Shown: one piece after another, positions 8,161 through 63,340 of the stretch
Position numbering within the stretch: position 1 is the stretch's first letter
Layout: the number at the start of each line of letters is the position of its first letter
Assembly: GCF_963676685.1 (NCBI RefSeq)
Contig: NC_092352.1
Span: 25,172,001-25,236,000, forward strand
DNA: 64,000 bases
Direction: 5' to 3'
Source of the DNA: Mytilus edulis
Lineage: Eukaryota
Translations under genes and position numbers: made by a program
Notes under the pieces: generated by a model
What the model was told of the DNA's origin: nothing
The model's input: the letters and a program-made list of their open reading frames with translations, nothing else
The model's database searches: none

Positions 8161-8276
8161 TTAATCTTGTAAAACATAGAAACACGTCATTGGAATAGGA
8201 TTAATGTCATTGTCATTATTTCCCTCGGTTTGTTTCTTCATACTCTCTGTCTGTTCACCGTACTCTTGTCCTGGTT
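8161..8276 (-). other. Candidate last exon (probably 3' UTR) of HEPN-like copy 1
   Basis: Strong acceptor TATTTATCTTGCAG| at 8277, downstream of the TM exon donor at 9295. The 3' end is uncertain. Confidence 0.4.
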
Positions 8277-8560
8277 CTGCAAGATAAATAACCACATTAT
8301 GTTAAAATTCTTCGTTTAAGTATAACCAATTACATGCTTAATTTGTGTTCTTTTCTGTTTATAATTTTTTTTTAAATTATGTCATTTGTCGGGGAGAAAC
8401 TTTACATTTATAACTAAAGGGCAACATTTCAGATGCAATAATTATCGATATGCATAATAGTAGAACAACATTGTGACATGCTAGTACTTGATTTTTATCA
8501 CACGCCAACAAAGGGGAAATACTTTCAATTTTTGACAAAAATACAATTTATTAAAGTTAA

Positions 8561-9264
8561 GGTAGCACAATACAAAGATTTTTCATCCCAAATCAGACAT
8601 CTTTAAACTGATGCAATTCCATTTATCTTTCTTTAAATTTTATAAATGAGGTGCCAAAAGAAAGAAGAAAGATTAATCTTTTAAATTGTGATAATTTCAT
8701 TAAGAAATAATTATTACATAATTAATTGTTATGTAATTAGTTGCCATATTGTGATGTCCATACTTGAATGAATTTAGCTTCTTTGTTATTCATAGCATCC
8801 CAAAATATTTTATAGAATCTCTTACAACACAGTTTGACCTCCAAAAATTTGGCTCAGATTTTTCCTATTGTATTTCATTCTCTCATAAATCTTCAATGAA
8901 GTTTGCAACATCAATTCATAAGACACCACTAAATTCATTTGGGTATAAAATTTGTTCTATTGATGTTTTTGGAAATCTGAGACACGGTTTTGGAGGTCAA
9001 GCTGTGTTGTACAAGAATCTATAAAATATTTTGGGATGCTATGAACAACAAAGATACTAAATTCATTTCAGTGTGGTCACCACAATATAGCAACTTATTA
9101 CATAATAATTAATTATGTCATTATGTAATTATCACAATTTGAAAGATTAATTTTTCTTCTTTCTTTTGGTACCTCATTTATAAAATATAAAGAAGGATGA
9201 AATGAATTACATCAGTTTAAAGTTGTCTGATTGGGGATTGAAAAAATCATTGTATTGTGCTACC
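8561..9264. mobile_element. About 700-bp palindromic MITE with TTAA target-site duplication (Kolobok-like termini)
   Basis: TTAA|GGTAGCACAATACAA...TTGTATTGTGCTACC|TTAA. The arms are complementary over about 300 bp. Confidence 0.85.
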
Positions 9265-9295
9265 TTAATACAGATAAATCTACAAGTAAGTGTAC

Positions 9296-9361
9296 CTTTT
9301 AGAAAGTATAAACTGCAATGGTAATCACTAAGGCAATAACAGCAACTAGTAAAACTAATAT
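9296..9361 (-). CDS. Transmembrane-anchor exon of HEPN-like copy 1
   Basis: Acceptor ...GAACTACAG|; phase 0 gives ILVLLVAVIALVITIAVYTF* (TAA 9301-9299). Flanking intron sequence (AAGGAAGTGTAA) resembles that next to the TM exons of copies 3 and 4. Donor GTACAC is weak. Confidence 0.65.
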
Positions 9362-9799
9362 CTGTAGTTCAACATCAAGGAAGTGTAATAAACTAGTTTT
9401 AATTTGTCAACTTGTGAACGTTCTAATGACTTCTGACAATCAATGTATTTTGTGTTGTTTTTACTGTTTTTCGCGCCTGTTCTTCATCGTTTGATTCTGT
9501 ATTGTTTCTGACATTTTATATTTTCGTTTAGTCTACGCACTTGTATTTTACTTAGCGACGTTTAAAAGGCGAATAAAGTTATCAGTCAACAATTTTAGAT
9601 TATCCTTTCAGATACAAATGAAACGTTAGATTATCTTTACAATTTGATACTTTTTCATAAATATTTAGTAATTTTGTGTACTTAAAAAAAGGACAATCCA
9701 TCCATTTTGCAAAAAAGGAGACTTCATATCATCATAAGTATGGCAACTTATTTATAATTTTTCTTATTTCTATATTTGTAGGTGTAAATATGTTTAACT

Positions 9800-14578: not shown

Positions 14579-15190
14579 TTGTGGACTTGTCATATCGATC
14601 TGCTTTATCTTTGAGTCTTCAATTGTGCTAATTCTGACCAAGCCAATGTCATGCTGTGTTGCTCCTAACTTCTGGAGATTTGGTGATAAGGTAGCCCACA
14701 TCTTTTCAAAGTCATTTGCTCTTATACGTTGGTCTGTGTAGTCAAGCTTCAACTTTGTATGGACTTTTAGAATGATATCGACAGATTCTAATATGTCTGC
14801 GTTCAAAATTTCGAATTGCCGAAATAAGAAGGCAAGTTGTGGCATCTCCAGATCTGGAGACATAATGCGCTTGGCAATAATGTGACATAGACATGGGTGA
14901 ACATTACAATGCGAGTTTATCTTGTAACCGTAATCATAATAAGCATCAAGCTTGTCACGGCTGATTGGACGGTTTTTGGATTTGGTGCAGTCTTTCACAT
15001 TTTCACAGCACTCTTTGTCGTTCCAGTACAAATGCATAATTGTATGCTTGATATTTGTATTGTTGAGAAATTTCTCCAACGACTGGTTTGTTCTGTGGAG
15101 ATAATTTTCCATCAGTTTATCAATTGTTGGTTCGGCAATTTTGTGGAAGAGATTATTTATACGAAGGTAATTGTCACGTTGTGTAGCCAT
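14579..15190 (-). CDS. HEPN (DZIP3-type)-like protein, copy 1, main exon (204 codons), catalytic motif absent
   Basis: Acceptor TTACTTTACAG| 8 nt before the ATG; donor CAA|GTATGT, phase 0. The pattern NYLRI..LF...FL...H.I.H...CC...C...C...CLC...FEKMWATL...L.KLG matches copies 2-4 and the DZIP3-like HEPN layout. The RxxxxH position reads HTKLKL. Confidence 0.8.
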
Positions 15191-18495: not shown

Positions 18496-19410
18496 GACTT
18501 TTATTTATTTGGTTTTTTTTTTTTTATTTTATGTTTTTGTCATTGATAAAGCATTGTCTTAATTTTTTAATATAAATTATTTTAATTTTTGTCAGTCGGA
18601 TATTTCAATGTCTATCAATTTTCTCTTTTTTTTCAATCCATTTCTAGTTGTATTATCCCAGATCTGTATATGAATATATGTATGACGTCTGACTATCTTC
18701 AAGCAATTGATAACCGGCAATTTTGTCTAAAATAAAGAAGAACAAAAAATCTTTCATATGCAAAATAATTGATGAATTATTCAAAAAGTAAATGAAGGTA
18801 AAAAATGTTTCAAAATATTCCACTAAAAATACTAATCTTTTCGTTTAAAGTATAAATAAAAGCGGAATTTTGAACTAACATTTCGTTAAGAGTAGAAAGT
18901 TTAGTTTAACTTTGTCAAAATAAGCTCTAAAACATCATCACTAATGTATTATTGGCTTGTAAGTGAATAATTCGACCTCATGTGAATCCGTATTCATGTG
19001 AACTTGAATTTAAAACCTTAGCTCGAGATGGATTACTTATTTACTAGGCGTGTTCAGTTATTAAATAGAAACAATTGTTATGAGTGAAATAAGGGTGAAT
19101 AATGTGTTGATTGATTCGATCCACAAAAAAAGACTAAATTGTAAATATATTTTGTAAAACTGAGAGCGGTCTGCTTGTTTACCGTTAAATATTCCATGCT
19201 GACCTTTATATATCATGTGTTCCTAGTAGGGATCTTACTGAACGTACCCCGCTTCTCTTTTCATTAATGTTTGTTAACTTACCATTAAATGTACAGGACA
19301 AGTACAACAATGATTCCTACAGGTATGGCTAGAATGATCAATACCTTTGTATGTGTCAAGGAAATAATCAACAAATTGTATGAAATGATAGTCACAGGGA
19401 AACTACATAC

Positions 19411-19471: not shown

Positions 19472-21129
19472 CTGTAAAGAATACAGCATTAGTTGAAAGT
19501 TTTTTTTAATATAACTCCAGCTTCAACAAAAAGTTTTAAAACTAATTCATTTAACCCATTTTCATTCCGAATTATAAAAAAAAACACAATTAGACCGTGA
19601 AAGATATCAGTGTGTACGCCAGATGCGCGTTTCGTCTACAAAACACTCACCAGTAACGCTTGTCGCAATAAGTTAACATGTAAAATAAAGAACGAATGAA
19701 TCTTTGGGTACGTAAAATTGCTACAAATTTCTCGTACCAGATAATTTATCGATTTCCGTTCTGTACTGTCATCTCTTGATTTCCAATGACTCTTATAAAA
19801 AAAATAAGTATATACACTTATTCAATTTACACACACTTATGAAAAATAAAGCAGCCCATAATGGAAAACTTACAAGTGCTTTCTACGTATAATTTTTACA
19901 TTATATTTTATATTTTTCGACATTTTCCTCCAAATTCATTTGAATGATAACCAAAGGATACGACTAGTGCCATCAGTAGTATTTTACAACATGGACATCT
20001 GCAACCCTGCAAAAAATGAAATAGATAAATTTATTAACCATTCTAATGAGAATAAAAACTCATCAAATATACCAGAATTATAGCTGTGTACGTCAGACGT
20101 GCGTTCAGTCCAGAATAGACTCATCAGTGACTCTCGAAATTTAAGGTAAGAAAATTCCGATAGGTATTGACTGATCTGAGAGATAGAGTCATAAACATAA
20201 ACTGCGTACATGCCCATTCAAGGTGAGGATTGGTTTAATTGCCTTTTCCTTGTTCAAAACCTCGTACGTTACGTTAAAAGTTAGGAAAAATCACCGAATC
20301 TACCCCCGACTAAATCTTAGTTTGAAACTTTAAAAGTTCACTTTATAATGAACAGTGGCAAAACAAAAATCCATGTTTAAACAAAATCATTACCATGTAA
20401 TTATTATATTTGATGTGTAGAACATTGATCATATTCATAAGTAAAAGTTATCTTTTGCAGTAATTACTAAATTTTGTAAAAGTGCAGACATCACCTACTT
20501 ATAAAAGAACAGACTCTATTTGTCTTAGCACTTCAAAGGTTTCTGGTTTATATTATTACTAACACATTTTTTAAATAACAATATATCATTCCCTCATATT
20601 AAGAAGGTGGAATCCTCACTAGAGGGGATGTCTGAGTCAGCTTAAGATGTATAAATGATCATTACTGCATTACAAATTAGACTGGTTGGATTTTCCAGTA
20701 TTCTATACACTCTTTAGATTAAAACACCAATGCTACATTTCACATAATGGATGTTAAGTAGCATTAGTGAAAGAAAAACTTCCATGATGCCCTTTTCACT
20801 GAAGGTTGTTAAACTCTTCTGCACATCATTTAAACTCTTATCTATTGAAATATGCCAATTATTTTTTTCACTTGAATTTTAGAAGTCATCATTCAGTAAA
20901 GCCACCTTTATTTGCATTACTAACTTCGGCCAAAAGGAATAGAAAAACCTTTAAAAAATGTGTCTGCCTATCATGAAAGTTTTTTTTTTTTAAATCGGCC
21001 TCTACGATCAGTGGTCAAAGATGTGGGTTGAACGTCTTGTTTCAGTATTTCATTTTTAAACTAGCTTCCATAAAGATATCAAGAGGAATTAGGATGACAA
21101 TTTCTTACTCGTATCTTTTCTCTTTCTAT

Positions 21130-21500
21130 CCCATCGAACAAGAGATAAAGGATACAACAGATACAGTTAAGTCGGCCTTATATCTTGACTTACATCTAGA
21201 AATTGACAATGAAGGTCGGTTGAAAACAAAACTTTACGACAAAAGAGATGATTTCAGCTATCCAATTGTGAACTTTTCATTTCTAAGTAGCAACATCCAG
21301 CATCACCTACATACGGGGTATATATCTCCCAATTGATACGATATTTCCTATCATGATTTTCTTGATAGAGGGTTGCTGCTAACAAGGAAGCTATTAAACC
21401 AAGAGTTCCAAATGGTGAAGTTGAAATCATCACAGGCGTTGTCAGTTTGTTTTCGATTTATGAGTTTGACTGTCCCTCTGGTTTCTTTCGTCCTTCTTTT
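21130..21500 (+). mobile_element. Penelope-like RT C-terminal fragment in the intron of copy 2
   Basis: YPIEQEIKDTTDTVKSALYLDLHLEIDNEGRLKTKLYDKRDDFSYPIVNFSFLSSNI. Confidence 0.85.
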
Positions 21501-21666: not shown

Positions 21667-22257
21667 CCTGTCATCCAAAGCAGTAGGAGTAGGTGTGCGG
21701 TTTACTCTTATTTTCTTTATTCTATCTATTTGCTGCTGTGTCACACCTAGGACCATCAAACTGTCTGTAGTGGTATTCCATTTGGTCTGAAATTCACTGT
21801 ACGGAACTATTCCTGTTCTTATGTCCTGCATCTCCTGATTGAACACATTCAGTCTCTTCAATGCTTCCATGTTCAACCCATTTAACATTGAGAATTCGAT
21901 TATAAGGAAGCATATAACATTCAGATTAAGATTCCGAAATTTTTTGCATGTTGTAACAACATTACAAATACAAACTGGCTTCGTGCAAACATTTTTTTCT
22001 TCGTCTTTATACAAGAAGCTCCATTGCCTTTGGGTCAGAGTTGCCTTTATTGGGTATGTACAGTTAGCATGCAATGAACAGCATGGCGATTTGACACGAA
22101 AACAGTGTACGATGCGATGTTTGTTTGTTTCTAGAAATTGGTAGATCGATACTTTATTTGCTCGCAGATGGTTGTCCAGAATTTTTTCACACGTTGGATA
22201 TACTAAACGAGTTAGAAGTTCATTCAGACGCTCGTAATTTTCCGTTCCTGATGACAT
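21667..22257 (-). CDS. HEPN (DZIP3-type)-like protein, copy 2, main exon (197 codons)
   Basis: Likely start MSSGTENYERL, with acceptor ...CAAAG|AAAG ATG; donor AGG|GTAATA, phase 0. About 76% identical to copy 3 by manual count. The RxxxxH position reads NQEMQD. Confidence 0.85.
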
Positions 22258-29036: not shown

Positions 29037-29091
29037 ATTATGAAGTGATGCCCAGTGTAATACCTATTGTAAGAACAACACAGAATACTAG
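29037..29091 (-). CDS. Transmembrane-anchor exon of HEPN-like copy 3
   Basis: Strong acceptor TTCCTTAACTTTAATACTTACAG| and perfect donor |GTAAGT. Phase 0 gives LVFCVVLTIGITLGITS* (TAA 29040-29038). A homologous 55-nt exon lies at 57314-57368. Confidence 0.8.
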
Positions 29092-32000
29092 CTGTAAGTA
29101 TTAAAGTTAAGGAAATTGTAATTATAATGCATTGTATTGTCAAACAATATGATCATTTCAATGAGAAAAATATCCGCAAAGTTATCAAAGTTCAAGGTCG
29201 TTAAACAACTACAGAACGGTCTTCGAAAGTTATCATAACACTAATTTATACATTGCGTAGGACTGTTATTTTTCTCTGATGAAATTATATTAGAGAGGAT
29301 GGAAATAAACTTACAACGCCATTGCACATAAAGAAAACGACCAAAAGACCAACAGCAGTATACAAAACGCAAAGCTCCTGCTTCTTGAGTGGCACCCGTC
29401 GTGTTGCTTATGCAAGTACAAACCCAGTATATATTAGTTGAATTCGTTGGGTCAACGTCGGGCAAAAATAGGTCGGGATTGTAGTTACGACAATTGGAAA
29501 AAGAGAATGGAAATAGGGAATTGGTCGAACATAAGCCAATTAAAATAAACACACAAAATTAATATGTGAAATAATAACGGTCAACTCGTGATGGCGTATG
29601 TTAAGTTTTGAAATGTTATTGTGAATGCAACAGATATAAGAAGGCTAATAAGATATTATTTAACTAAAACCAATTCGAGCATTGACATGTTACGCAACGC
29701 TCTTCTTCGACAGACAATGACCCTACTGCTTCAAATAATAGATGGCACATTGCATACAGAACAAGACACGAAAAACGCCATAACAGCCGTTTCTGTTTTC
29801 TTTCCGAAGCAAAAATCTGTCATTGTTTTAATTACTGAGGACTTTCATAAATATTCTATAGTATTTACACGAACTTATTCCATTAATTTCCATTGACTTC
29901 CTAAATACAAAACTACCCAAGCACGATTCATATAAGAGCTTTCTAAGTATTTTTTACATGGCATTTTATCTTTATATTAACTGCTTTCCTCACAATTCAT
30001 GTAAAGGATACGGCACTTATCGATAGAAGTATTGTATAACATACATTTCTGCACTCCTGCAAAACAGAAAAAGCTAAATTAATAAACTATCATAACATAT
30101 TGAACAAATCAGTAAGAGTCCTATTCTTAAATTTTGTTAAGACACGTTCAAGAAAAGCACTTAGTTACTACCTACTTAACAGAGCAAAAACTCGTACTTT
30201 CAGTTTAAGGTCTGGAGAAAAACTTTAATTTCAGTATTAAAACTTTAAAATCAAAAGTATGAGTAAATCTATGATTTTAAAATTGTAAACATTGATTTTT
30301 TTTAAATCCAAGTTTTTAGACTTTGTATCATTGTCATATTGTTTAGGGTTTTTTTTTTTGTTACTTATTCTGACATCGGACTTCTTTTAACTGAGTTTTA
30401 CTGTGCGTGTTGCTGTGCGTTTGTTTTTTCTACATGGGCTTGAGGAATAGGGGGAGAGTTGAGATCTCAAAAACATGTGTAACCCCGCCGCATTTGTGCG
30501 CCTGTCCCAAACCAGGAGTCTCTGGCCTAATTAGTCTTGTATGATTTTGAATTATAGTTTCTTTTGTATATTTCGGAGTTTAGTATGACGTCCATTAATA
30601 CTAACCTAGTACACATTTTTGTTTAGGGGCCAGCTGAAGCACGCCTCCAGGTGCGGGAATTTCACGCTGCGTTGAAGACCAATTGGTGGCCTTAGGTTGT
30701 TGTCTGCTATCTCGTCGGGTTGTTGTCTCTTTGACACGTTACCCATTTCCATTATAAATTGTAATAAAACTCCCGTTAATATTGTTACAAATAAAAATAG
30801 TGAGCATATATACATATAGTCTCTTAAACGGTTGAGTTGGATCATTATTTAAGGCCGTATAGTAACCTGTAGATAATACCATCCTCGTCCTTCGGTGTCT
30901 GGTCTCGTAGGCAATCATAACATATCTTATTTTTATACGATTTTTCATTTACATAAAAAAAAAACGTCTATATATCATTGTATTGACAAATTTTATCAAA
31001 ACAAAGATATTAAAAAAACAAAAATGTGTGTCGACAAGAAATGATACCTCGCTCACACTATCACACTACCTAGTTCAGTGAACCACAGAATCTTGATCAA
31101 AATGCTTATTCGACAATTTTTATAAAACGCCCACATTCTGATGAACAGCAACACAAAATAATCTTCCCAAAATTTATCCTGATGTCATCATGAGATTTGA
31201 TATCTCTCATATTGATTAGTTTCACTGATGAAAGTTTCATTTGCAGCTTATTCTCTGTAATTTGTAGAAATGTTGACGTGACCAATTTAAAGATAGAGCA
31301 GAATTTACAGACACTATTTTTAGTTGTAGAAATTTAAAAGTATCTAGGTTGTAAAACTACAAACACATTTTATAAATTACAACATGTACATTCGTTCATG
31401 TTAAACATGTAGAATCCTTACCAGAGGTGATGTCTGAATTATCTTTAGCTACATAATTGATCATAACTGTATCACAAATTCCACTTGTTGTTTTGTCCAA
31501 TCTACAGCCGTATTAGTAAAACTTCAATCATGCTCTTTTGTCCTAAGGGCTGTTTAAATGTTCTACACATCCCTTAAATTTTTATAACAAAATATGCCAC
31601 TAATTTCTATCACTTGAGTTTCAGCAAACATTCATTAATTAGTAAAGACACCTTTATTTTTGATATGGGCTACTGTCAAAATGAAAATCGAAGAAATTGT
31701 AAAAATCAATTTATCTATCAAATTACCCATAGCCAGAAATTTGTAGTACTTTTGCTAATTAATATTCATAATATGTAAATGAGAATTGTACCACGTGATA
31801 ATAGTTTGAACTGGAATGGGTTGATATCATTAAAATCTTTAAAACACGGATATTATAAGTTGCCCGTCACAAAGCCTTGATTATAATCACTCTGATATTT
31901 CCGTAAAGGGAAAACGGTACTATTTATTCTGCCATAGGCGACAATACTAACAATTCCTAAATTTACCACTTTTTATAATAAAAACCTGAATAAAACAGTT

Positions 32001-33398: not shown

Positions 33399-33989
33399 CC
33401 TGTCATCTATAGCAGTGGGAGTTATAGCAGTGGGAGTAGGTATGCGGTTTACTTCATCTATCTGCTGCCGAGTAACACCTAGGACCACTAAACTGTCTGT
33501 TGTTGTTTTCCATTTGGTCTGAAATTCACTGTACGGAACTATTCCTGTTCTTATAACCTGCATCTCCTGATTGAACACATTCAATCTCTTCACTGCTTCA
33601 ATGTTCGATCCATTAATCATTGAGCATTCGATTATAAGGAAACATATAACATTCAGATTTAGATTCCGAAATGTTGTGCATGATGTTATAACTTTACAAA
33701 TACATCCTGACTTCCTGCAACTATTTGTTTTTTCGTCTTTATACAAGAAACTCCATTGTCTTTTGGTCAATGTTGCCGATATAGAGTATGCACAGTCAGC
33801 ATGCAGTGCACAGCAAGTTATATTGACACGAAAACAGTGCATAATGCGATGTTTGTTTGTCTCTAGGAATTGGTAGAACGACACTCTATTTTCTCGTAGA
33901 TGATTTTCGAGTATCTTTTCACACGTTGGATGAACTAATTGATTTAGTAATTTATTCAGACGCTCGTAATTTTGCTGTTCTGATGCCAT
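33399..33989 (-). CDS. HEPN (DZIP3-type)-like protein, copy 3, main exon (197 codons; 214 aa with the TM exon)
   Basis: Acceptor GTTAG|AAAC ATG; donor AGG|GTAATA, phase 0; intact frame. The RxxxxH position reads NQEMQV. Confidence 0.85.
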
Positions 33990-46310: not shown

Positions 46311-46442
46311 GCAAAAATATATTATTCATTATGTTCCATGACAACGTTTACGAGTTGACACTATGAGTGAAACTAGTTTTTCCTCGTTGTATGTTCACCA
46401 CTCACTTTAAGAAAAAAAAATGAAAATCTAATACAACTTAAA

Positions 46443-47257: not shown

Positions 47258-47276
47258 ATGGAAGAACAATTCTTAC

Positions 47277-48410: not shown

Positions 48411-48452
48411 CGTCACTGATGAGTCTTATGTAGACGAAACGCGCGTCTGGCG
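48411..48452 (+). ncRNA. Minimal type I hammerhead ribozyme, intact core
   Basis: Stem I CGTCA/TGGCG; CTGATGA at 48416-22; stem II GTCT-TATGT-AGAC; GAAA at 48436-39; palindromic short stem III ACGCGCGT; GUC cleavage triplet at 48445-47. Confidence 0.85.
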
Positions 48453-48740
48453 TATAAAATTATAATCCTGGTACTTTTGATTTCTATTATAACTGCAGAG
48501 TTATTTTCAATATATATAAGGAGCCACACGACACTTTAGAGTTCCAATAAGATTGTCTTTATGGAAAAGTATACAACATATGTACAGTGCCCTAACTTGT
48601 TTACATCATCTTTTTTCTCTGGTGAATAGCAATGTAACCCCCTCGTCTTATTTGTATATTTTGGAAAAGGTTCATGTGGTGATTGGCATATTGTGTTACA
48701 ATAAACTCATCATATAAACCAGGATTAAATTTTATATTTA

Positions 48741-48785
48741 CACCAGACACGCGTTTCGTCTACAAAATACTCATCAGTGACGCTC
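48741..48785 (-). ncRNA. Minimal type I hammerhead ribozyme, sense to the P450 pre-mRNA (intron 1)
   Basis: Reverse strand GAGCGTCA-CTGATGA-GTAT-TTTGT-AGAC-GAAA-CGCGT-GTC-TGGTG. The core is intact, with one stem II mismatch. Confidence 0.75.
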
Positions 48786-49019
48786 GAATCCAAAAATAGT
48801 TAATAAGGCCAAAATAAAGCACGAAGTTGAAAAGCATTAAGGACCGAAATTCTTAAAAGTTTTGCCAAATACGGCTAAGGTTATCCACACCTGAGATAGG
48901 AAAGCCTTAGTATTTCAAAAATTCCAAATTTTGCAAACAGTTAATTTATAAATATGACCATATCAATGATAATTCATGTCAACACAGAAGTAATTGTTAA
49001 TGTACTTGTAATTAATATG

Positions 49020-49295
49020 GTTTTGGGAATCGTTTATCGGAATTTGACTATTTACCGAATTTGTTTTCACATAAGCAACACGACTAGTGCCACATGTGGA
49101 GCAGGATCTGCTAATCTTTCCGGGGCACCTGAGATCACCCCTAGTTTTTGGTGGGGTTTGTGTTGCTAATTCTATAGTTTTCTATGTTGTGTCATGTGTA
49201 CTATTGTTTGTCTGTTTGTCTTTTTTTCATTTTTAGCCATGGCGTTGTCAGTTTATTTTCGATTTATGAGTTTGGTATCTTTTGTCCCTCTTTTA
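49020..49295 (+). repeat. Retroelement 3'-tail repeat with self-complementary ends
   Basis: AGCAACACGA...GGAGCAGGATCTGCT...GCACCTGAGATCACC...GGGGTTTGTGTTGCT. Tail fragments recur at about 21435, 24675 and 51375. Confidence 0.65.
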
Positions 49296-51454
49296 TCAAT
49301 CTACAACATTTCCGTGAATTCTTTAATGTCTTAACATGTTTCCTCTAAGTGAACCTGGTTCCTGGTGGAAACATGAACCAATGCAATACTGAGAGCATTA
49401 TACGTTTGTCTTTGATAATCGGGGGAAATCGAGAAAAATGTCCCTTCGCGGATAACAAAACATATCGTTTGATGTGTTTGTGATTTTGATTTTACCATTT
49501 GATTAAGGACTTGCCGTTTTGAATTTTCCTCGGAGTTTAGTATGTTTGTGATTTTACTTTAATACATGTAGATACGTAGATATAGAAAAGTGGTGTAGAT
49601 TAAATATGATGAGATAAACAGATTAAAATTCAAAATTCATAAATGGGCTTACAATCTGTGTCAACACTATGTATGTACAAATTCTATTTTAATATTTTTA
49701 ATCAGGTTGACTTACTGTACCTGAACTTTAGTCCTTGACTGTGTTCTGAACATATGGGGCATTTTAATCAAAGCTGTCCTACGCAATGTCATAAGACCAA
49801 TGTTAGATTGCAATGACACCATTATAGACAGGAAGATAGGTTGAATATTTGAAAAGAATATAGATACAAATTATACTTTAAACGATATTAATAGATGATA
49901 TTTGACATAACTGTCTGCAAGACAGTTGATGACATTTTCCTGTATAAATTGTGAATATCATTCAATGATTAAAACAAAAATGGAAAAAAAGTCAAAGATT
50001 TGCTACAAAGCCAAAAAGCAACAATACTCGTTAACAGCAAAATGCAATGACCGTGACTAACGTGTATTCTAGTAAAAGTTACAATCCAGTGAGTAACGAT
50101 TTAACCAAGGCTTTTCAATTACTATATGGCTAAATTACTCTTCTACACTATTAACTCCATTTACTGCATTTCAACTACAAAGACCACATCCTACTCTAGC
50201 ATATAACCAAACTTCACGACGTAATGATGCCATGCGGAAAGGCATGCGAACATAAGTGGAAGCAATTGATAAATTTTTCGTATCAGCCCCTAAGCATCTT
50301 TTTCAGAAAATGTGATATTTACGTAAATTTGATGCTTTTGTGATGCAGTGAAAATTAAAAGTTATAAACTCTTTATTAATAATTATAACAAGCATATCAA
50401 TCAAGATACAGACAAAGACAATAGAATATGATTATGATTTTTATCACAAATAACATGCAAACAAGAATAAGAGAGAAATAAGTCTACAAAGGATGATAGG
50501 TCAGATTTAAAAAAAAATTGTTAATACCATTAATTTTGTATTATTTTTTTTTATGTTTTAATGCTGTCAAAAAAGAATATAAGTTAAGTTCTACTTCATC
50601 GCTCTTATCGTTTCAAATAAAAAAGTCAGATAATCACTGAATTCATATATTAATTGCAAGTCATCAATTGACATTATCGAGTCTAAAAGATCCTCTTTTT
50701 GCAATCTTTCCATTTCTGAAACTAGTATTACCCGATTAACATGTCTCGGTGTAACAACTGTTGACATAGAAACACAATCAATCAAACAAATTACATATTT
50801 ACTGACATGAGATAATGTTATTCAAACGTTGGTTATTACATATAAGTAAAGTCTAATTAATAATGATCTGAAATCTTGTCCTCGTCCATGAAGTTTGAAA
50901 GATATAACGATACAGATATATGATGATAATTCGCACAATAACGTTTTTATCTGTAAGAAAACTCTGTTTACTATTATGGTTACGTGTATGATGCTAGCAG
51001 ATATTTTGACGATGAATTCTTTGTAATAAATCCTGATCTTTCTGAATATGCATACGAAATTAATCCACTTCATCACACTCTTATCAAAATCAACGTTAAA
51101 ATCAATCGTTGTCCCTTTTTACACTTGCTAATTTAGAATACCCAACATGAAAACAATACGTTAAATAACTTCATTCGTTTGAAGTGCTTTTCTGGATTTA
51201 CCATAATTAGGAATGGTCAAAGCTTAATAGAATGTATAAGAATTAGTTTTGTTATTACTCATGTCGGTATCGAAGTTCTAACCACTGAGCTGATGGTACC
51301 CTTTTACACTAAAACTACTCAGAGTCTGAAATGCCAGACGTTGTGCTCGACAAGTGAAATCAAGCACACATTTTAAAAGAGGGACGAAAGATACCAAACT
51401 GACAGTCAAACTCATAAATCAAAAACAAACTGACAACGCCATGGCTATAAATGG

Positions 51455-52700
51455 AATTTCATCAAACTATATAGCTATCTCAGTTATATATTGATCTTAC
51501 TGAATCCCATGTCGTTTTGTAGTTTGGTGTATTGCTGTCAAATTTAAGGATTAAATAAATCTAGATAAAAAACCTAGAATTTGCATTTCGGACTAAAGTT
51601 AGATAGTACATTCTTTTTACAAATTTTTTTATTACTTTTTCAAATTAATTTGGATTTTCAGCAAACTGTACACCTATCTCAGTTATATATTGGCCTTACT
51701 GAATTCCAAGTTGTTGTGTTGTTTGGTATATTGCTGTCAAATTTAAGTTTTTTTTAAATTAATCAAGGTAAAACAAAAAGCTAGAATTTATGTTAACATT
51801 AAATTCAGATAGTACACTTAAATTTTTTTTCTAACTTTTTCAAATTAACTTTGATTTTCATCAAACTATACAGCTATCTCAGTTATATACTGATCTTACT
51901 GAATCCCATGTTGTTATGTATGTTGGTGTATTGCTGTCAAATTTAAGGATTGAATTAATCTAGGTTCAAAAAGGTTAAAGAAATTATCAAAATTGTTCTT
52001 ATTCTGGTGTGAGGTATAAAGCAATACCTCCTGCATGGGTCAAACTCATTAAATAGATCACACGTACCAGAGTGTATTCAATTCTAAATAATGTTCATTC
52101 AAAATTGCAACATCCTGGTAAACTTAAATCGCAAGGCCTTTTGAATTCAATAGATAAATAATACAAGAGTTTAAGAAAAGTAGGGCTTTCTTTTTACCTG
52201 TAAAACACACATATACTGATGTAATTACACATTATTAAAGTGCTTTTTGTATGCGATGACTATTCTAGTTTTAACAAAACAAAGTTGTCATTTTTTAAAT
52301 TTTATAACTTTTTTCAAATCAACTTAGATTTTCATTGCACTGTTCAGCTATCTTTTTTTATATATTTATCTTACAAAATACCAGGTTGTTTTGTATTTTG
52401 ATGTATTGCCGTCAAGTTTGGGGACTTAGTTTATAGGTAGGAAAAGGCTCAAATGTTCAGTTTTGACAAAATTCAGATAGATGCCTATAATTTAAATATT
52501 TAAATTTGACAGCCATAAACCAAATAATTTGTTTTTTGTAAGATAAATAAATAATGAATATAGCAGTGGATTTTGATGAAAATCCAAGTTGCTTTGAAAT
52601 AGTTATAATTTTTTAAGACTGAAAATTCTAGCTTTCTTTACCATGATTAATTAAACCCCAAAATTTGACAATAATATGTCAAACATCATTTCAACCTGTT
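51455..52700. repeat. About 200-bp tandem repeat (three clear units, one degenerate, one inverted remnant) in P450 intron 1
   Basis: CTATCTCAGTTATATA.TG..CTTACTGAAT at 51475, 51675 and 51875. Confidence 0.8.
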
Positions 52701-52811
52701 GTATCTAATATAGTTATCCCGCAATGTTAAGTCTTTGAGAGAGTATGACCTTGGTATACTGTAAAGACATTAGATCTACTGTTCAGTAATGTTTGTGGGC
52801 CTCTGGTCTTT

Positions 52812-53215
52812 GTTTTATGCCCTTGCAACTCAAAGGTGGAGGGCATATTGTTTTACCCCTGTCCGTCTGTCCGTCCCAATATTGATGTATAGTTATTAAG
52901 CTTAACATATCCTAAAGTTTGAATCCTAGGAAATTTTCACTTTGTTGCTGTTTGTACATGTATATCGACGGTGTGCATGTGTTCAGGATTTTGATTTTTG
53001 TTAATATTCGCTCTTTGAGAGATAGTTGAACTTTGTCACTTTTTGGAATATTTACTTACATAAGAGGATCGTTTTCAGATAACTCCTCTTACAGTTTGAA
53101 TGCTAGAAAGGTTTCACTTTGCTGGCTATTGTACACATATTGAAGATGTGCATGTGGTCAGGATTTGAATTTTATTATTGTTTGCTCTTTTGGGAGATAG
53201 TTGAACTTTAACATA
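52812..53215. mobile_element. Truncated Helentron/pearl-like element with two roughly 180-bp repeats
   Basis: TTTTATGCCC...GGGCATA hairpin, (GTCC)n, then a duplicated GTTTGAAT.CTAG..AA..TTTCACTTTG...GTGCATGTG.TCAGGATTT...GAGATAGTTGAACTTT block. Confidence 0.55.
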
Positions 53216-53517
53216 TTGGGGTATAAGCGGTTAAATGATAAAGTTATTGTAAAATAACACTTTATATCTGCGGGTGAATCAATTTTGTCTCCCACCATAA
53301 ATTCTCAAAGAAAGTCCTACATTGACTTTGTTATAATACAGTTACTTCAGAGTAGAGTGCGAGGGCATCACTTTGTCTAGTTTTCTTTTATGTTTGTGTA
53401 TGTATGTGTGTATCACTTTGCTACAATCCCATTGATATATATACATATACTTAATTTTATACTGTAATGTACAAAAATAACACAAGATCCGGTCGCGTAT
53501 TTGCATAATCTGTTTAC

Positions 53518-53869
53518 CTTGATGTTGTAATAGCCTTGTGAAAAAGAAATTGTCTGGTCTATCACTGAACATGTCACCTTGTTTCACTAAAGCATCCTTT
53601 AAATTCTCGTATCCATTTATAACTACTATCCAACTCGACCCCAACTTCAAACTGTATATATCACCATACTGTTGTCGTAATTCACGGAAAGCTTCAATCA
53701 AATTTTGTTTTCCTGTGATGGACATCATGTTTCCAACGACTGGCCAGAGACGAGGCCCGGGAGGCATTCCAGACGGACGACGACATTGCTTTATTAGTGT
53801 ATACGTTATAAGACCGAACAAAACAAGAAACAAAATTGACGATGCATCAGTGAAAAGAGAAAAATCCAT
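53518..53869 (-). CDS. Cytochrome P450 exon 1; full spliced CDS 352+519+444+182 = 1497 nt, 498 aa
   Basis: N-terminal membrane anchor, PPGPRLWPVVGN hinge, YGDIYSLKLG and FSDRP. Donor CAAG|GTAAAC. All three introns are phase 1 and the frame is intact. Confidence 0.95.
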
Positions 53870-57313: not shown

Positions 57314-57368
57314 ATGTTTGAACGACACCCAATACAATACCTATTGGAATACCAACACTTATTAATAG
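57314..57368 (-). pseudogene. TM-anchor exon of HEPN-like copy 4
   Basis: Acceptor ...CATACTTACAG|, donor |GTAAGT. Reads LLISVGIPIGIVLGVVQT plus T; same 55-nt length as in copy 3. Confidence 0.75.
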
Positions 57369-58725: not shown

Positions 58726-60061
58726 GGGGGATGATTCGGAAGAGTGAACAGAGACTGATCTATGCATTGCTCATGTAAGTACAAACCCTTTGGTACGTCT
58801 AATCAGGTAGGTCACATTCGGGGAAATGGAAGACGGGATTGTGGTTACGCCGATTGGAATAGAAAATGGGAACGGACAATGTGTCGAACAGGTAATAACC
58901 CGACCTACTAGCAAGATAAAAAAGACCAAGGCCACCAATAGGTCGAACAAGCTGTTAAAAAAATCCTGCACCCGGAGGCGGACTGCAAATGGTATCTCAA
59001 AAATAATGTTTACTATTTCGGTGAAATTGACGCCACATTGATTATTTAACCATAACCAAAAAGGAACAGAAAACAGAACATCCATGTGTCACGGTATACG
59101 TTTTAAAGACAGGCAATACCCCTACTGATTAAAGCTATAGATGGACCCTGAATACGAAATAAGACCCCATAACACAAAAAATATAACAAACGTTATGATT
59201 TCGTTCCTGAGCGACAAATCATTGCTTGATTTCAAATTCGTCTCGGTTTATATTCTTGTGTATCTAAACGAACTTATTTCATTACCTTTCACCTCTGATA
59301 TACATGGATACATATACGAGATTTGTAAGTTTTAATTTTACATGCCATTTTATTTTCATATCAACCGCTTGCTTCAGAATTATTATGAAGGATACAAGTA
59401 GCATACTTATTAGAAGTTTAAAACATTTAAAACATGAATTCCTGCATCCCTGCAAAAAAAGGAAATGTTAAAGAAATTAATAAGAGTAATATTCTTAATT
59501 TTGACCAGGAAAAAAACCCTTAATTTAAGTATGAAGACTTAAAATCCATGACTGCAAAAATGAGTTAATCTTTGAATTTAAAATGATATAACAATTAAAC
59601 ATCCAAGTATCAAACTTAATTCCATTTAAACAGATAAATAAATCTTTGAACTATAAAATTATTAAAATTATAAATAGTGTGCATACATGTAGTCTCTTCT
59701 ACTGTTTGGTTTGATAATTGTTGAAGGCCGTATGATAACCTGTAGATGATACATCCTTGCCCATCAGGTCTAATTGGCAATCACCCAATATCTTATTGTT
59801 ATACTATGTTTTCCTTTAAATAAATTTTAAAAAAAAAATATGTTTCTACAGGAAATGATGCCACGCTCACGCAATCATACTTTCATGTTTAGTACATTGT
59901 AGAATCTGCGTCATGTAATTATAATTATTTAATTCATCATAGATACCAAGATTGAAATTTAGTAATTTAACATATATTTTATAAAAAGTTCACATTTTAT
60001 TAGAAGGGGCATAACATCATCATCAGGTATTTAATATAAGCTGTTATATTTTCAATATTGA

Positions 60062-61252
60062 CTAGAACACACCCGCGAAATCGCGGGCATTAGAGCTTTT
60101 GAGATTTCATATCTGGAGAATTTAAAAAAGGTATCAAAATGTATAGGTACTTGGAAACAGCTTAAGTCCTCTTCCAAAGTCCCGTTATTTTTTTCTGTTA
60201 AATTCCATTATTTTCGCGTTTCTGTATACTATGAACATACGTATCTATATTATAAATATTAAAGTGTATTTAATTTTCTATTAACTATTAATTCTATAAA
60301 GTTTTTTCTCCATGGCGATCACTGCTATATTATATAGAGAGTCTCTATATATTACAGTAGTATATTATTCATAGTATACGGGGATGATGCAGAAAAACGT
60401 GAAAATAATTGTCTTGTCCCCGTCCAGGTTCTTATGAAAAATTGAGTGTAAGTTAAAACCGAGGTATAATAGTAGTGGATCTTACGATCTAAAAACCACG
60501 ATATGGACAACGCTCTGATTGGCTTATTTATTTATCATTTTATTGTTATCTATCATACGATTGGATATCAATGTTAAAACCGGTAGTCATGTCTGACTTA
60601 AAAGTCGGTTTGGTGACGGAAACCTACTGCTTTATTGTATAGAGAGTGCATCTAAAACAAAAAGAGAGTTATTTGTGGAAAACTTTTAGTGCATACTAAG
60701 TTTTAATTAACTCCCGTCTGGATAATATCCGTTGAGGAGGTGTTCCATAATTGGAAGGAAATACATATAGAAGAGGAAGAAGAAGAAGAAGAAGAGTCTC
60801 TATGTATTATAATAGTATATTAATCATAGTATACATGCAGATAAACGCAAAAATAATTGTCCTTTCCCCGTCCAAGAACTTAGAAAAATTATGTGTAAGT
60901 TAAAACCGAAGTATAATAGTAGTGGTTCTTACGATATATAAAAACCACGATATGGACAACGCTCTGATTGGCTTGTTTATTTTTCATTTTTGTTAACTAT
61001 CATACGATTGGTTCTCAATGTTAAAACCGGAAGTCATGTGTGACATGAAAGTCTGTTTGATGACGGAAGCGATATTCGGATGCCTTAATTTTCGTTTTTC
61101 TCCCAAAATAACCCAAACTGAATGGTTATAAGAATGGATGACAAATGCGACTATGCATGGTACCTATAGGACACAGAGGCATGATGATTAATTTATTGTG
61201 GGAGGAAGAGAAGCGACACACAAAATGAAGTCTTCTCGTTTAATAGTATAGA
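60062..61252 (-). mobile_element. Non-autonomous Helitron
   Basis: On the minus strand A|TC... start at 61252, GC-rich hairpin CCCGCGA-AA-TCGCGGG at 60072-60087, and ...CTAG|T end. There is an internal direct repeat of about 280 bp (60335-60625 and 60792-61070). Confidence 0.85.
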
Positions 61253-62014
61253 TTAATTTCACTGATAAAATATATCTTTTGCAGGTAACACATTTTGGTA
61301 CCAGTTTTTTCTAAACTAGATGGGCATTTGGACAATAAATGTGTCCTTGGTGATGCTTGAGGTCTAAATAGTTCACAGTCCAAAGCTTAGTAAATAAGAA
61401 GGGATGTCTGAATTAGCTGTAGATATATATTGATTATAACTGCATTACACATTCTAGTGGTTGGGTTGTCGAGTCTACTGCCAAAGTGTGCCATGCACCT
61501 TTTCGTAAAATGTGTCTGTTTACAAATAGCTTTAAAACTTTAAGTTTATCATATTATCATTTAATGTTATAAGCATCTAGTATCGGTGCTTAAAGGTGTG
61601 TCTTATACATATTAGTTTCTTGTGTATAATTCTGAGTTTGGTATGGCGTCCATTATCCCTGAACTAGTATACATATTTTTCAAGCGCCAGCTGAAGGACA
61701 CTCCTGGTGCGGACGTTTCTCGCTACATTGAAGACCCATTGGTAGCCTTCGGCTGTTGTCTGCTTTATAGTCGGGTTGTTGTCGCTTTGATACTTTCCCG
61801 ATTTCCTTTCTTAATTTTATTTTTATGTTGCAATATTTTCTTGTCGAAACTGACCTTTTTTAACCCGATTTTTGTCACTTCTTTTCAATGGACTGTTAAG
61901 GTACGACGAAAATAGCAGAAATGAATGACGTGATCTTTTGTACCCTATTGTATTAAGGTATTAAAATTTGCAACGACCACTTTTTTTTTGTGGAAAACGC
62001 TTTCAGAATATTAA

Positions 62015-62589
62015 CTGGCCATCTAAATCAGTAGGTGCAGTTACTCTCAAATTCTTTATTCTATCTATCTGCTGCTGAGTAACACCTAGGACCATTAATT
62101 AAACTGTCTGTAGTGGTATTCCATTTGGTTTGAAATTCATCATACGGAATTATTCTTGCTCTTATGTCATGCATCTATTGGTTGAATTCATTTAGTCTCT
62201 TCAAATCTTCAACTTAGTAATCATTGAGAATTCGATTATAAGGAAACATATAACATTTAGATTAAGATTAGATTGTGCATGTTGTTATAACTTGACAAAT
62301 ACAACCTGACTTCCTGCAACTATTTGTTTTTTCGTATTTATACAGGAAGCTCCATTGTTTTTGGGTCAGTGTTCCCTTTTTTTGGATATGTACAGTTAGC
62401 ATGCAGTGAACAACACGTTGTATTGACACGAAAACAGTGCACAATGCGATGTATATTTGTATCTAAAAATTGGTAGAACGACAATCTATTTTCTCGCAGA
62501 TGGTTGTCCAGAATCTTTTCACACGTTGGGTATACTAATTGATTTAATAATCCATTCAGACGCTCGTAATTTTGGTTTTCTGATGTCAT
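62015..62589 (-). pseudogene. HEPN-like copy 4 main exon, pseudogenised
   Basis: Starts MTSENQNYERL, then a +1 frameshift in the A-run near 62375. Further deletions near 62270 and 62215, a 4-nt insertion near 62097, and the homologous GT donor changed to TT. Confidence 0.85.
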
Positions 62590-63201
62590 GTTTCTTGCAG
62601 GGACAAAAGAATAACCTGAAATGATAGTTATTATTGAATTATTGGTCGTGTCTGTGTCTATCTGTTTTATTCGTGACGTTGCTGTTTGAAATTTTGCGCG
62701 AAAAATAGCTATCAAAAATAAGGGATTACCGATTATGTACTTTTGCTTACATTCATAGAACGCGAACATTCTTCGATACGGTACTATGGAATGTTGTATG
62801 TTTGTACCTGTGTTTGTTGTTGGTCATACTAGCATGATTGTATGGCTTTTTTCTAAAATGATGATCATTGTTTGTTGTTGTTGTTTTTTATTCCTGTTGT
62901 AATTCCACTGCTCGAAATTAAAGGAAGTTGTTTTTGTGTTAAAACTAACAATGACGGTGTAAACCTGGCACGCACATATCTATCTGTTTATGAATCTTGA
63001 TGTGTAGTCTTAAGTTATGTCTTTATGTTTAAGTCATTTAAGACGTCCGTTTTATTAACAAATTTTGATAGCCTGTTAAAATTATTATCAATTTCTCAAT
63101 ATTATCTTTTATTTATATTTTAAAGCCGAAGTTACTATGAAATTATAAAGAAAAACATGAATTTGTTTATATATAATATATATATATATTTAGAATCTTA
63201 C

Positions 63202-63340
63202 CGATATTTGTTGGTCAATATTCAAAATCCTTACAAATACCACATGACATGAAATTATAAATAGTTGACCTTTTTCAAATGTTTAGATTTTTGTTAGACT
63301 TACAAAGCGATTCACATAAGTGAATCTTTATTGTTTTTAT
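63202..63340 (-). promoter_or_regulatory. Promoter and first-exon homologue of copy 4
   Basis: Donor |GTAAGA at 63201, TATTTATAA at about 63255-63263, AAAGGTCA at 63266-63273. Confidence 0.45.

What the first reader, a model, noticed from the sequence alone, without database searches (positions are those of the whole stretch)
8161..63340. Tandem family of predicted tail-anchored, catalytically dead HEPN-fold proteins with a Cys/His insertion (best candidate for an undescribed system)
Seen: four paralogues share one architecture: short non-coding exon, roughly 600-nt exon ending in phase 0, 55-66-nt hydrophobic exon, then a last exon. In copies 1 and 3 a stop directly follows the TM helix. In copy 4 the terminal T plus the candidate next exon (acceptor at 55878) would give TAA. 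No signal peptide is present. Manual alignment to the DZIP3-like HEPN layout (NYxR..LL; QWxxL; D-hydrophobic helix; RNxxAH; FxxxW...LG) holds throughout, but RNxxAH is replaced by NQEMQD, NQEMQV or HTKLKL. Established: HEPN RNases need RxxxxH and act as dimers, and DZIP3-like HEPN domains are expanded in bivalves, usually fused to larger immune-type proteins. Inference: these roughly 214-224-aa proteins are cytosol-facing membrane-tethered pseudo-nucleases. They could be decoys, dominant-negative partners or membrane recruiters of active HEPN effectors, or nucleotide/RNA sensors.
Basis: partly seen in the sequence, partly recalled or inferred. Interest (0 to 1): 0.85.

Follow-up and report, generated by a model that had tools for sequence, protein, structure and literature searches.

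The report
Membrane-anchored dead HEPN gene cluster in mussel
A tandem cluster in the blue mussel genome encodes small proteins whose RNase-type (HEPN) domain has lost its catalytic residues and which end in a membrane anchor; this is a real, little-studied variant of a known immune-type family with no function shown yet.

Summary

**What the window holds**
- It lies on Mytilus edulis chromosome contig C9 and carries three intact paralogues (c1, c2, c3) and one pseudogene (c4), all on the minus strand.
- Two more intact paralogues (c5, c6) lie just past the window end, so the cluster has six members.

**Corrected gene model**
It encodes juxtamembrane cysteines and the first half of the membrane helix, and ends in a U12-type donor (/GTATCCTT).
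- A U12-type intron then precedes the 55-66-nt hydrophobic exon.
- RefSeq models for c1 and c6 use this structure. So does the M. trossulus model of c2, and one spliced contig supports it for c3.
- The tail-anchor conclusion still holds.

**Fold and active site**
- HEPN is supported. PF18738 is the best Pfam hit, below threshold for the window's own proteins but above it for close relatives.
- Two AlphaFold models have HEPN structures as their top matches (Z 7.7 and 8.2).
- Relatives outside the cluster keep [RK]N..H. The tail-anchored clade is monophyletic and lacks the motif.
- The Cys/His module is shared with the active relatives.

**Status**
- Function is untested; a non-catalytic membrane adaptor or regulator is the inference.
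- The scan had already noted this array in the overlapping neighbouring window (s1-832422).

The parts
14579..15190 (-). c1 exon 2: start codon and 204 codons of the HEPN/Cys-His domain; donor caa|gtatg
   Evidence: ORF and sequence. Identical to residues 1-204 of RefSeq protein P0057 of this genome. Full-length AF2 model has pLDDT 81.8.
   Evidence: Present in RefSeq model P0057.
9296..9361 (-). c1 exon 4: second half of the membrane helix, TAA stop at 9301-9299. Preceded by a TCCTTGA branch-site motif 14 nt from the acceptor.
21667..22257 (-). c2 exon 2: 197 codons of the HEPN/Cys-His domain; donor agg|gtaat
   Evidence: One residue different from M. trossulus XP_063447022.1 (P0002). AF2 model has pLDDT 86.5 and pTM 0.81.
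19962..20006 (-). c2 exon 3 (45 nt, GCRCPCCKILLMALV) with U12-type donor
19283..19344 (-). c2 exon 4: VLIILAIPVGIIVVLVLYI, TAA stop at 19287-19285. TCCTTGA motif 12 nt upstream of the acceptor.
33399..33989 (-). c3 exon 2: 197 codons; donor agg|gtaat
   Evidence: 97% identical to M. edulis CAG2244579.1. Covered by contigs of runs X3 and X9.
30012..30056 (-). c3 exon 3 (45 nt, ECRNVCYTILLSISA) with U12-type donor
   Evidence: A 440-nt contig of run X3 joins exon 2 to this exon and then to 29091. That contig carries an allele lacking 9 nt (CYT), as P0001 does.
29037..29091 (-). c3 exon 4: LVFCVVLTIGITLGITS, TAA stop at 29040-29038. TCCTTAA motif 16 nt upstream of the acceptor.
   Evidence: Joint 30012|29091 seen in an X3 contig.
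31543..31572 (-). Possible alternative c3 exon (GCVEHLNSP, then stop) that would give an isoform without the membrane anchor
   Evidence: One X9 contig (depth 4.5, 40 letters on the shorter side) joins exon 2 to about 31572, after a tttaag acceptor. Weak evidence.
62021..62589 (-). c4 large exon: pseudogene
   Evidence: Five indels (+1, -5, -7, +4, -9), an in-frame TAG and a lost donor relative to c2/c3. The six-frame search shows stops inside the match.
59396..59449 (-). c4 exon 3 relic (54 nt, GCRNSCFKCFKLLISMLL), still open, with U12-type donor
57314..57368 (-). c4 exon 4 relic (LLISVGIPIGIVLGVVQT, no stop inside). TCCTTAA motif 16 nt upstream of the acceptor.

Best explanation
**What it is.** This is a Mytilus-restricted tandem cluster of small genes: six members on chromosome contig C9, five intact. 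Each gene encodes three parts:
- an N-terminal DZIP3-like HEPN domain that carries a conserved His2/Cys5 module, probably zinc-binding;
- a short disordered linker;
- a C-terminal tail anchor preceded by juxtamembrane cysteines.

**Gene structure.** The anchor is encoded by two mini-exons split by a conserved U12-type intron.

**Predicted topology.** There is no signal peptide and the only hydrophobic segment ends 0-1 residues from the stop in c1-c3. The protein should therefore be inserted post-translationally, with the HEPN domain facing the cytosol.

**Activity.** The clade has lost the Arg and His of the Rx4-6H RNase motif that its non-anchored relatives keep. No other polar residue is conserved at that site. 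The proteins are therefore most likely non-catalytic.

**Inferred mechanism.** They probably act as membrane-tethered binding modules, for RNA or nucleotides or for other HEPN proteins, within the expanded bivalve HEPN/NLR-type defence repertoire.

**Shown versus inferred.** Shown here: the genes, the splicing, the fold class, the motif loss, the anchor and purifying selection. Inferred: zinc binding, palmitoylation of the juxtamembrane cysteines, which membrane is targeted, and the regulatory or adaptor role.
For: **Gene structure**
- RefSeq proteins from this very contig give c1 as 239 aa (P0057) and c6 as 232 aa (P0042). Both have the exon 2 / mini-exon / hydrophobic exon layout.
- The M. 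trossulus model of c2 (P0002) maps to window exons 20006-19962 and 19344-19288.
- An X3 contig joins 33401 | exon 3 | 29091 for c3.
- All six copies have /GTATCCTT at the end of exon 3 and TCCTTRA 12-16 nt before exon 4.

**Fold**
- PF18738 is the best Pfam hit for every member. It exceeds the cut-off in P0004 (29.3 bits) and in genomic relatives.
- AF2 models have pLDDT 86.5 and 81.8.
- VIA top hits are Csm6 4rgp_B at Z 7.7 and 8.2. Many other HEPN entries are in the top 50: 1wwp, 2hsb, sacsin 3o10, MtlR, Swt1 4pqz, AbiF 8vz6, the HEPN toxins 8xdj, 7ae2 and 5yep, and Cas13.
- The nearest ESM Atlas clusters are mollusc clusters carrying PF18738 and PF15112.

**Dead site**
- In alignment A2 the motif column reads RN..H or KN..H in relatives, and FNQEMQD/V, VHTKLKLD, FHAFFQN or ECRLCEF in the anchored clade.
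- The tree puts the anchored clade on one branch with 100/98 support.

**Anchor**
- There is a single Kyte-Doolittle peak (2.5-3.6) at the extreme C-terminus and none at the N-terminus.
- The c1 model has a helix at residues 203-238.

**Constraint**
- c2 versus c3 gives dN/dS 0.39.
- c2 differs from its M. trossulus orthologue at 1 of 231 residues, and c1 at 5 of 239.
Against: - None of the window's own proteins reaches the Pfam cut-off.
- Foldseek against PDB found nothing. The VIA Z-scores (6-8) are in the range that helical bundles can reach by chance, as the tool itself notes.
- Two raw RNA-seq runs showed no reads on c3 exon 2. Splicing evidence from reads rests on single contigs in runs whose RNA status is only guessed.
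- One contig suggests a c3 isoform without the anchor.
- The homodimer prediction gave no answer.
- Zinc binding, localisation, lack of RNase activity and any partner are all untested.
- One of the four window copies is already a pseudogene, so the family may be partly dispensable.
Confidence: 0.65

Rival explanations
1. The proteins are still RNases and use residues other than the canonical Rx4-6H, as some HEPN families do.
For: Anantharaman et al. 2013 (PMC3710099) note HEPN families that keep activity with altered motifs. The helix-1 [YF]xR motif and W160 are retained. c2/c3 keep Asn and Glu in FNQEMQ.
Against: The residues at the motif position are not conserved among the six paralogues: FNQEMQD, VHTKLKLD, FHAFFQN, ECRLCEF. 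The only invariant polar residues in the alignments are the His/Cys of the metal module.
Confidence: 0.1
2. The cluster is a decaying, largely dispensable lineage-specific expansion with no maintained function. The open frames simply have not yet been hit by mutation.
For: c4 is a pseudogene. c3 had zero reads in two RNA-seq runs. c3 exon 3 carries a 9-nt indel polymorphism. The family is known only from Mytilus.
Against: dN/dS is 0.39 between c2 and c3 at dS 0.42. Five members have intact ORFs with intact splice signals, including the rare U12 signals. c2 is near-identical to its M. trossulus orthologue, at 1 difference in 231 residues.
Confidence: 0.1
3. The main products are soluble. The anchor exons are optional, and the proteins act in the cytosol like other small DZIP3-like HEPN proteins.
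For: An X9 contig joins c3 exon 2 to an alternative exon at about 31572 that ends in a stop after 9 codons.
Against: An X3 contig and four RefSeq models include the anchor exons. The anchor exons and their U12 signals are conserved in all six copies, including divergent c1 and c6. The alternative exon is seen in one low-depth contig only.
Confidence: 0.1
4. The domain is not a HEPN homologue but an unrelated helical bundle with a zinc module. The Pfam and fold matches reflect generic four-helix packing.
For: Pfam scores are below threshold for the window's own proteins. VIA Z is at most 8.2 and designed helical bundles appear among the hits. Foldseek found nothing.
Against: phmmer links c2 to motif-bearing proteins that pass the PF18738 cut-off, at E 1e-5 to 6e-4 in a library of 1.84 billion. 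The RN..H of those relatives aligns with the degenerate site. HEPN entries are the top hit and the most frequent class for two independently built models.
Confidence: 0.05

Closest known systems
DZIP3/hRUL138-like HEPN domain family (Pfam PF18738)
   Same: Best Pfam match. Same layout: helix-1 [YF]xR, QWxxLY, D-hydrophobic helix, FxxxW...LG. Large lineage-specific expansions in bivalves (PMC3710099, PMC9646362). Relatives in the same genome pass the Pfam cut-off.
   Different: Rx4-6H is lost, whereas 194 of 202 pearl-oyster members keep it (PMC9646362). The proteins are small and stand-alone, with a C-terminal membrane anchor instead of fusions to NACHT, Death, TPR or RING. The window's own proteins score below the Pfam cut-off.
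CXorf38 / DUF4559 (PF15112) HEPN with an inserted Zn ribbon
   Same: A Cys/His metal-type module is inserted into a HEPN domain (PMC3710099). Among the nearest ESM Atlas clusters are mollusc clusters carrying PF15112 together with PF18738.
   Different: No PF15112 hit at E <= 1 for any member. CXorf38 keeps RNEIMH and is soluble.
Membrane-bound eukaryotic HEPN proteins: Ire1 (KEN domain) and C6orf70/ERMARD
   Same: A HEPN domain held at the cytosolic face of an endomembrane by a transmembrane segment (PMC3710099).
   Different: Those are predicted or proven active RNases with other domains, and they are not tail-anchored. Here the site is degenerate and the anchor is the extreme C-terminus.
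Inactive HEPN domains (Swt1 C-terminal domain, MtlR, HEPN fused to nucleotidyltransferases)
   Same: HEPN fold without the catalytic dyad, thought to act by binding RNA or partners (PMC3710099). Swt1 4pqz and MtlR 3brj/3c8g are among the fold matches.
   Different: Unrelated subfamilies, none membrane-anchored, none with the His2/Cys5 module.

Membership tests
HEPN_DZIP3 (PF18738) | Score at or above Pfam's gathering cut-off (27 bits) | tested here: not met
   c1 16.0-16.3, c2 24.2-24.3, c3 21.9, c5 23.3 and c6 18.9 bits. It is the top hit each time. Close homologue P0004 scores 29.3, and relatives L003, L005 and L011 score 29.8-33.4.
HEPN_DZIP3 (PF18738) | HEPN four-helix core fold | tested here: met
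   AF2 models have pLDDT 86.5 and 81.8. The best VIA match for both is Csm6 HEPN 4rgp_B (Z 7.7 and 8.2). About 15-20 of the top 50 are HEPN-superfamily entries. The Z values are moderate.
HEPN_DZIP3 (PF18738) | Rx4-6H catalytic motif | tested here: not met
   The aligned position reads FNQEMQD (c2), FNQEMQV (c3), VHTKLKLD (c1), FHAFFQN (P0007, the c5 type) and ECRLCEF (c6). Relatives read RN..H or KN..H.
Tail-anchored membrane proteins | Single transmembrane segment within about 30 residues of the C-terminus | tested here: met
   Kyte-Doolittle 19-residue maximum of 2.5-3.6 at residues 211-236. It ends 0-3 residues from the C-terminus in P0057, P0002 and P0042. The c1 model has a helix at 203-238.
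Tail-anchored membrane proteins | No signal peptide or other membrane segment | tested here: met
   There is no N-terminal hydrophobic stretch (9-residue KD maximum <= 1.2), and no sustained second run of windows above 1.6. No dedicated predictor such as DeepTMHMM or SignalP was available.
Tail-anchored membrane proteins | Post-translational insertion (GET/TRC40 or equivalent), cytosolic N-terminus | not testable with these tools
   Needs localisation and insertion assays.
U12-type (minor spliceosome) introns | 5' splice site /RTATCCTT | tested here: met
   /GTATCCTT lies exactly at the end of exon 3 in all six copies. The window has 5 minus-strand matches in all, against about 1.7 expected on both strands.
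U12-type (minor spliceosome) introns | Branch-site TCCTTRAY close to the 3' splice site | tested here: met
   TCCTTGA or TCCTTAA lies 12-16 nt from the acceptor of exon 4 in all six copies.
U12-type (minor spliceosome) introns | The sites are used in transcripts | tested here: met
   Joint 30012|29091 in an X3 contig for c3. RefSeq models for c1 and c6, and the M. trossulus model for c2, use the same sites. Dependence on the minor spliceosome itself was not tested.
CXorf38 / DUF4559 (PF15112) | Match to the Pfam model | tested here: not met
   No hit at E <= 1. Only neighbouring ESM Atlas clusters carry it.
APOBEC-like deaminases (PF08210) | HxE ... PCxxC zinc site on an alpha/beta deaminase fold | tested here: not met
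   The hit is weak (18.8 bits against a cut-off of 25). The His is followed by CF, not xE. The model is helical apart from two 3-residue strands and matches HEPN structures.

The most novel reading that the evidence does not exclude
The anchored pseudo-HEPN proteins pair with catalytically active DZIP3-like HEPN effectors, many of which sit at the N-termini of NLR-like proteins in bivalves. HEPN active sites are built across a dimer, so a dead, membrane-bound partner could do one of two things. It could silence and sequester an effector at a membrane, giving antitoxin-like control of an animal immune RNase. Or it could nucleate effector assembly there, giving a MAVS-like tail-anchored adaptor.
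Probability: 0.12. Interest if true: 0.75.

Novelty: new variant of a known kind. Interest (0 to 1): 0.45.

Why it matters
DZIP3-like HEPN domains are among the most expanded putative immune effector domains in bivalves, yet none has been studied biochemically. This clade combines three features:
- it has shed the catalytic dyad;
- it has gained a tail anchor;
- it has stayed under purifying selection.

That makes it a natural candidate for a regulator or membrane platform of this system, and a compact (~230 aa) entry point for experiments.

The U12-type intron that splits the membrane helix in all six paralogues is a clean marker for tracing the family. It is also a reminder that gene predictors and manual reading can miss 45-nt exons bounded by minor splice sites.

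If the proteins turn out to be only dispensable paralogues, the finding is a routine lineage-specific expansion.

Tried and rejected
- **Foldseek against PDB:** no match at E <= 0.001.
- **Profile of A2 against PDB sequences:** nothing meaningful; best E was 0.08.
- **Homodimer prediction for the c2 domain:** no answer (score 0.00, controls not run). This counts neither for nor against binding.
- **Rfam on the whole window:** no family at gathering score.
- **APOBEC-like reading of the Cys/His module:** rejected. The hit is below threshold, there is no HxE, and the model is helical.
- **The look-up of encoding contigs:** Orthologous DNA from M. trossulus could not be fetched, so orthologue dN/dS and the state of c4 in other species were not obtained.
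- **Anchor architecture in distant relatives:** I looked for the same mini-exon/U12 layout downstream of 15 distant relatives elsewhere in the genome. None was found within the roughly 9 kb downstream that was fetched.
- **Joints 30736/30737 to 34449 in X24 and X9:** taken as repeat-element matches, not splicing of c3.
- **Spliced (joined) proteins of the window:** not sent to any search tool. Exons were searched by reference, and the database proteins P0057, P0002 and P0042 stood in for full-length c1, c2 and c6.
- **Read evidence:** only c3 was tested with reads (one call allowed). c1 and c2 splicing rests on RefSeq models.

Full report
**Where the window is.** The window is G000:C9:25172001-25236000. 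C9 is 88,296,451 bases long. RefSeq proteins XP_071129149.1 and XP_071133225.1 of Mytilus edulis are recorded on a contig of exactly that length. The genome is therefore the M. edulis chromosome assembly.

**The four copies.** Six-frame ORF listing finds four related open frames on the minus strand. They start at 15190, 22257 (ORF from 22317), 33989 and 62589 (ORF from 62769). Plausible donors follow at 14579, 21667 and 33399.
- c2 and c3 are 73% identical in protein and 81% in DNA.
- c1 is only about 25% identical to c2 and c3.
- c4 is not intact. Against c2/c3 its large exon has +1, -5, -7, +4 and -9 indels, a GAG-to-TAG change in the ancestral frame, and GT-to-TT at the donor. The genome search also shows stops inside it.
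- The indels are not all in homopolymers, so I read c4 as a true pseudogene in this haplotype.

**The cluster is larger than the window.** Two further intact paralogues lie at C9:25241470-25242021 (c5) and C9:25249114-25249662 (c6). That is 5.5 and 13 kb past the window end. A cytochrome P450 gene sits between c3 and c4.

**Corrected gene structure.**
- The M. trossulus RefSeq protein P0002 (231 aa) differs from c2's large exon at one residue. It continues with GCRCPCCKILLMALV and then VLIILAIPVGIIVVLVLYI. These map to two separate small exons in the window, 20006-19962 and 19344-19288.
- The same pair of small exons exists in every copy.
- Exon 3 is 45-54 nt. It starts with one to four cysteines among basic residues and runs into hydrophobic residues.
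- Exon 4 is 55-66 nt and completes the hydrophobic segment.
- RefSeq's model of c1 in this genome (P0057, 239 aa) has exactly exon 2 + RRCTELTLITINLIV + ILVLLVAVIALVITIAVYTF.
- RefSeq's c6 model (P0042, 232 aa) has the equivalent structure.

**Read evidence for c3.** I laid reads and contigs on 28700-34690.
- A 440-nt contig of run X3 (depth 11) runs from exon 2 into exon 3 and then across the joint 30012|29091.
- That contig carries an allele lacking 9 nt (the CYT codons) and has AAG for AGG at the last codon of exon 2. The M. edulis protein P0001 shows the same differences.
- All exon boundaries are in phase 0.
- In c4, c5 and c6 the frame runs on into the last exon.

**A U12-type intron splits the membrane helix.**
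- In all six copies exon 3 ends at /GTATCCTT.
- In all six copies TCCTTGA or TCCTTAA lies 12-16 nt before the acceptor of exon 4.
- These are the consensus signals of minor-spliceosome introns (established knowledge).
- Four of the five minus-strand GTATCCTT sites in the window are these donors. About 1.7 sites are expected on both strands together.
- The signals survive in copies as divergent as c1 and c6. This is independent evidence that the tail exons are old, functional parts of the genes.

**Tail anchor.**
- In P0057, P0002 and P0042 the only strongly hydrophobic segment is at residues about 206-236. The 19-residue Kyte-Doolittle maximum is 2.5-3.6, and the segment ends 0-3 residues before the C-terminus.
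- The N-termini are hydrophilic.
- The full-length c1 model has a disordered linker at 188-202 and a single helix at 203-238.
- With no signal peptide and a terminal anchor, the domain must face the cytosol (established knowledge of tail-anchored proteins).
- That placement favours zinc binding over disulfides for the Cys/His module, and makes the juxtamembrane cysteines candidate palmitoylation sites. Both points are inferences.

**HEPN fold.**
- PF18738 is the best Pfam hit for all members but stays below the 27-bit cut-off, at 16-24 bits.
- A full scan of 1.84 billion representatives with c2 found only 18 proteins at E <= 0.001.
- Among them, P0004 (60% identical to c2) scores 29.3 bits. 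The distant relatives P0015, P0016, P0018 and P0020 score 30-38 bits.
- Relatives at other loci of this genome score 29.8-33.4 bits.
- The AlphaFold model of the c2 domain has pLDDT 86.5 and pTM 0.81. The model of full-length c1 has pLDDT 81.8.
- Foldseek found nothing in PDB.
- The exhaustive VIA search put Csm6 HEPN 4rgp_B first for both models: Z 7.7 (rmsd 3.1, 110 residues aligned) and Z 8.2 (rmsd 3.3, 97 residues aligned).
- The top 50 of that search also hold 1wwp, 2hsb, sacsin 3o10, Roquin 4txa, MtlR 3brj/3c8g/6kcr, YutE 1ylm, the HEPN toxins 8xdj, 7ae2 and 5yep, Swt1 4pqz, AbiF 8vz6 and Cas13.
- These Z values alone would not be decisive for a helical bundle. Their consistent HEPN identity together with the sequence links makes the assignment sound.

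**Dead active site.**
- In alignment A2 the relatives read RNEISH, RNVTYGH, RNTYIAH, RNDAIAH or KNxYLSH.
- The anchored proteins read FNQEMQD, FNQEMQV, VHTKLKLD, FHAFFQN and ECRLCEF at the same place.
- A maximum-likelihood tree puts the seven anchored-clade rows on one side of a branch with 100/98 support. All but two of the 19 other rows keep [RK]N..H.
- Of those two, L008 reads RNKYDYLSH, a wider spacing of the same motif. Only P0021 has no such motif.
- None of 15 distant relatives examined shows the mini-exon/U12 tail within the ~9 kb downstream that was fetched.
- Loss of the motif and gain of the anchor therefore coincide in one clade.
- In the pearl oyster, 194 of 202 DZIP3-like HEPN proteins keep Rx4-6H (PMC9646362). 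Loss of the motif is therefore unusual.

**The Cys/His module.**
- H47, H51, C59, C60, C96 and C98 (c2 numbering) are invariant and C66 nearly so. This holds in anchored and motif-bearing proteins alike.
- The module lies between core helix 1 and the next core helix and includes two short strands.
- It is therefore a feature of the wider mollusc subfamily, not of the dead clade.
- Anantharaman et al. describe a Zn ribbon inserted into the HEPN domain of CXorf38 (PMC3710099). ESM Atlas neighbours carry PF15112. No member matches that Pfam model, however.

**Selection and expression.**
- c2 versus c3 gives dN/dS 0.39 at dS 0.42, with similar values across the domain.
- c2 and c1 differ from their M. 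trossulus orthologues at 1 of 231 and 5 of 239 residues.
- Twenty runs hold most of the c3 exon, though none of them is on record as RNA. Contigs of X3 and X9 cover the c3 exons but hardly any unique intron sequence.
- Two raw RNA-seq runs had no reads on c3 at the sampled depth.
- One X9 contig joins exon 2 to an alternative exon near 31572 that stops after nine codons. This hints at an isoform without the anchor.

**Verdict.** The exon structure is corrected and one copy is a pseudogene. The genes are already modelled in RefSeq as uncharacterised proteins, and I found no paper combining 'tail-anchored' and 'HEPN'. Function remains an inference, and the homodimer test gave no answer. I rate this a new variant of a known kind, of moderate interest. 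The scan's first stage also noted the same array in the overlapping next window (s1-832422). That is not independent evidence.

Noticed in passing
window 44724-53869 (-): A multi-exon cytochrome P450 gene sits inside the HEPN cluster, between c3 and c4. Three of its exons match PF00067 at E 4e-42, 3e-21 and 8e-17.
   Followed up: partly
L001:5425-6027 (-) and L002:3114-3662 (-), i.e. C9:25241470-25242021 and C9:25249114-25249662: Two more intact paralogues (c5, c6) lie beyond the window end. They have the same mini-exon, U12 donor and hydrophobic exon. c6 is RefSeq XP_071133225.1.
   Followed up: yes
window 30034-30042 and 33400: c3 is polymorphic. The contig of run X3 and M. edulis protein P0001 lack 9 nt (codons CYT) in exon 3, and they have Lys instead of Arg at the last codon of exon 2.
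   Followed up: partly
window 39743-40340 and 41586-42073: Two ~500-600-bp arrays of a 21-bp unit lie in inverted orientation about 1.2 kb apart. They look like the ends of a transposon or a large palindromic repeat.
   Followed up: no
window 30500-30750, 31900-32400, 32950-33100: Repeats inside the c3 intron collect very high contig depth (up to ~1500 in X9), and most reads there run on into unlike sequence. These are abundant, transcribed repeat families. A related 'caacaacccgac' element lies near c4 at about 61700-61800 and at 34449-34490.
   Followed up: partly
window 21148-21230 and L001:7370-7450: An almost identical ~75-nt stretch ending in GTATCCTTTA occurs about 450 nt downstream of the c2 large exon and again upstream of c5. 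It is a shared repeat or a remnant of the segmental duplication, not an exon of the family.
   Followed up: no
window 24172-24675 and 46476-47150: There is a 26-bp tandem array of 19.5 copies, and a 169-bp tandem repeat of 4 copies. The second lies between two P450 exon ORFs, so probably in an intron.
   Followed up: no
L003 and L004 (C14:37084758 and C14:37116430); L013 and L014 (C8:40425523 and C8:40394944): Motif-bearing relatives (KNxYLSH type) occur as recent tandem duplicates about 30 kb apart. The C14 pair has identical ORFs. Most ORFs of this KNxYLSH type end around an 'EEV' or 'DEV' motif; whether a donor follows, and so whether they are first exons of larger genes, was not checked.
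   Followed up: partly
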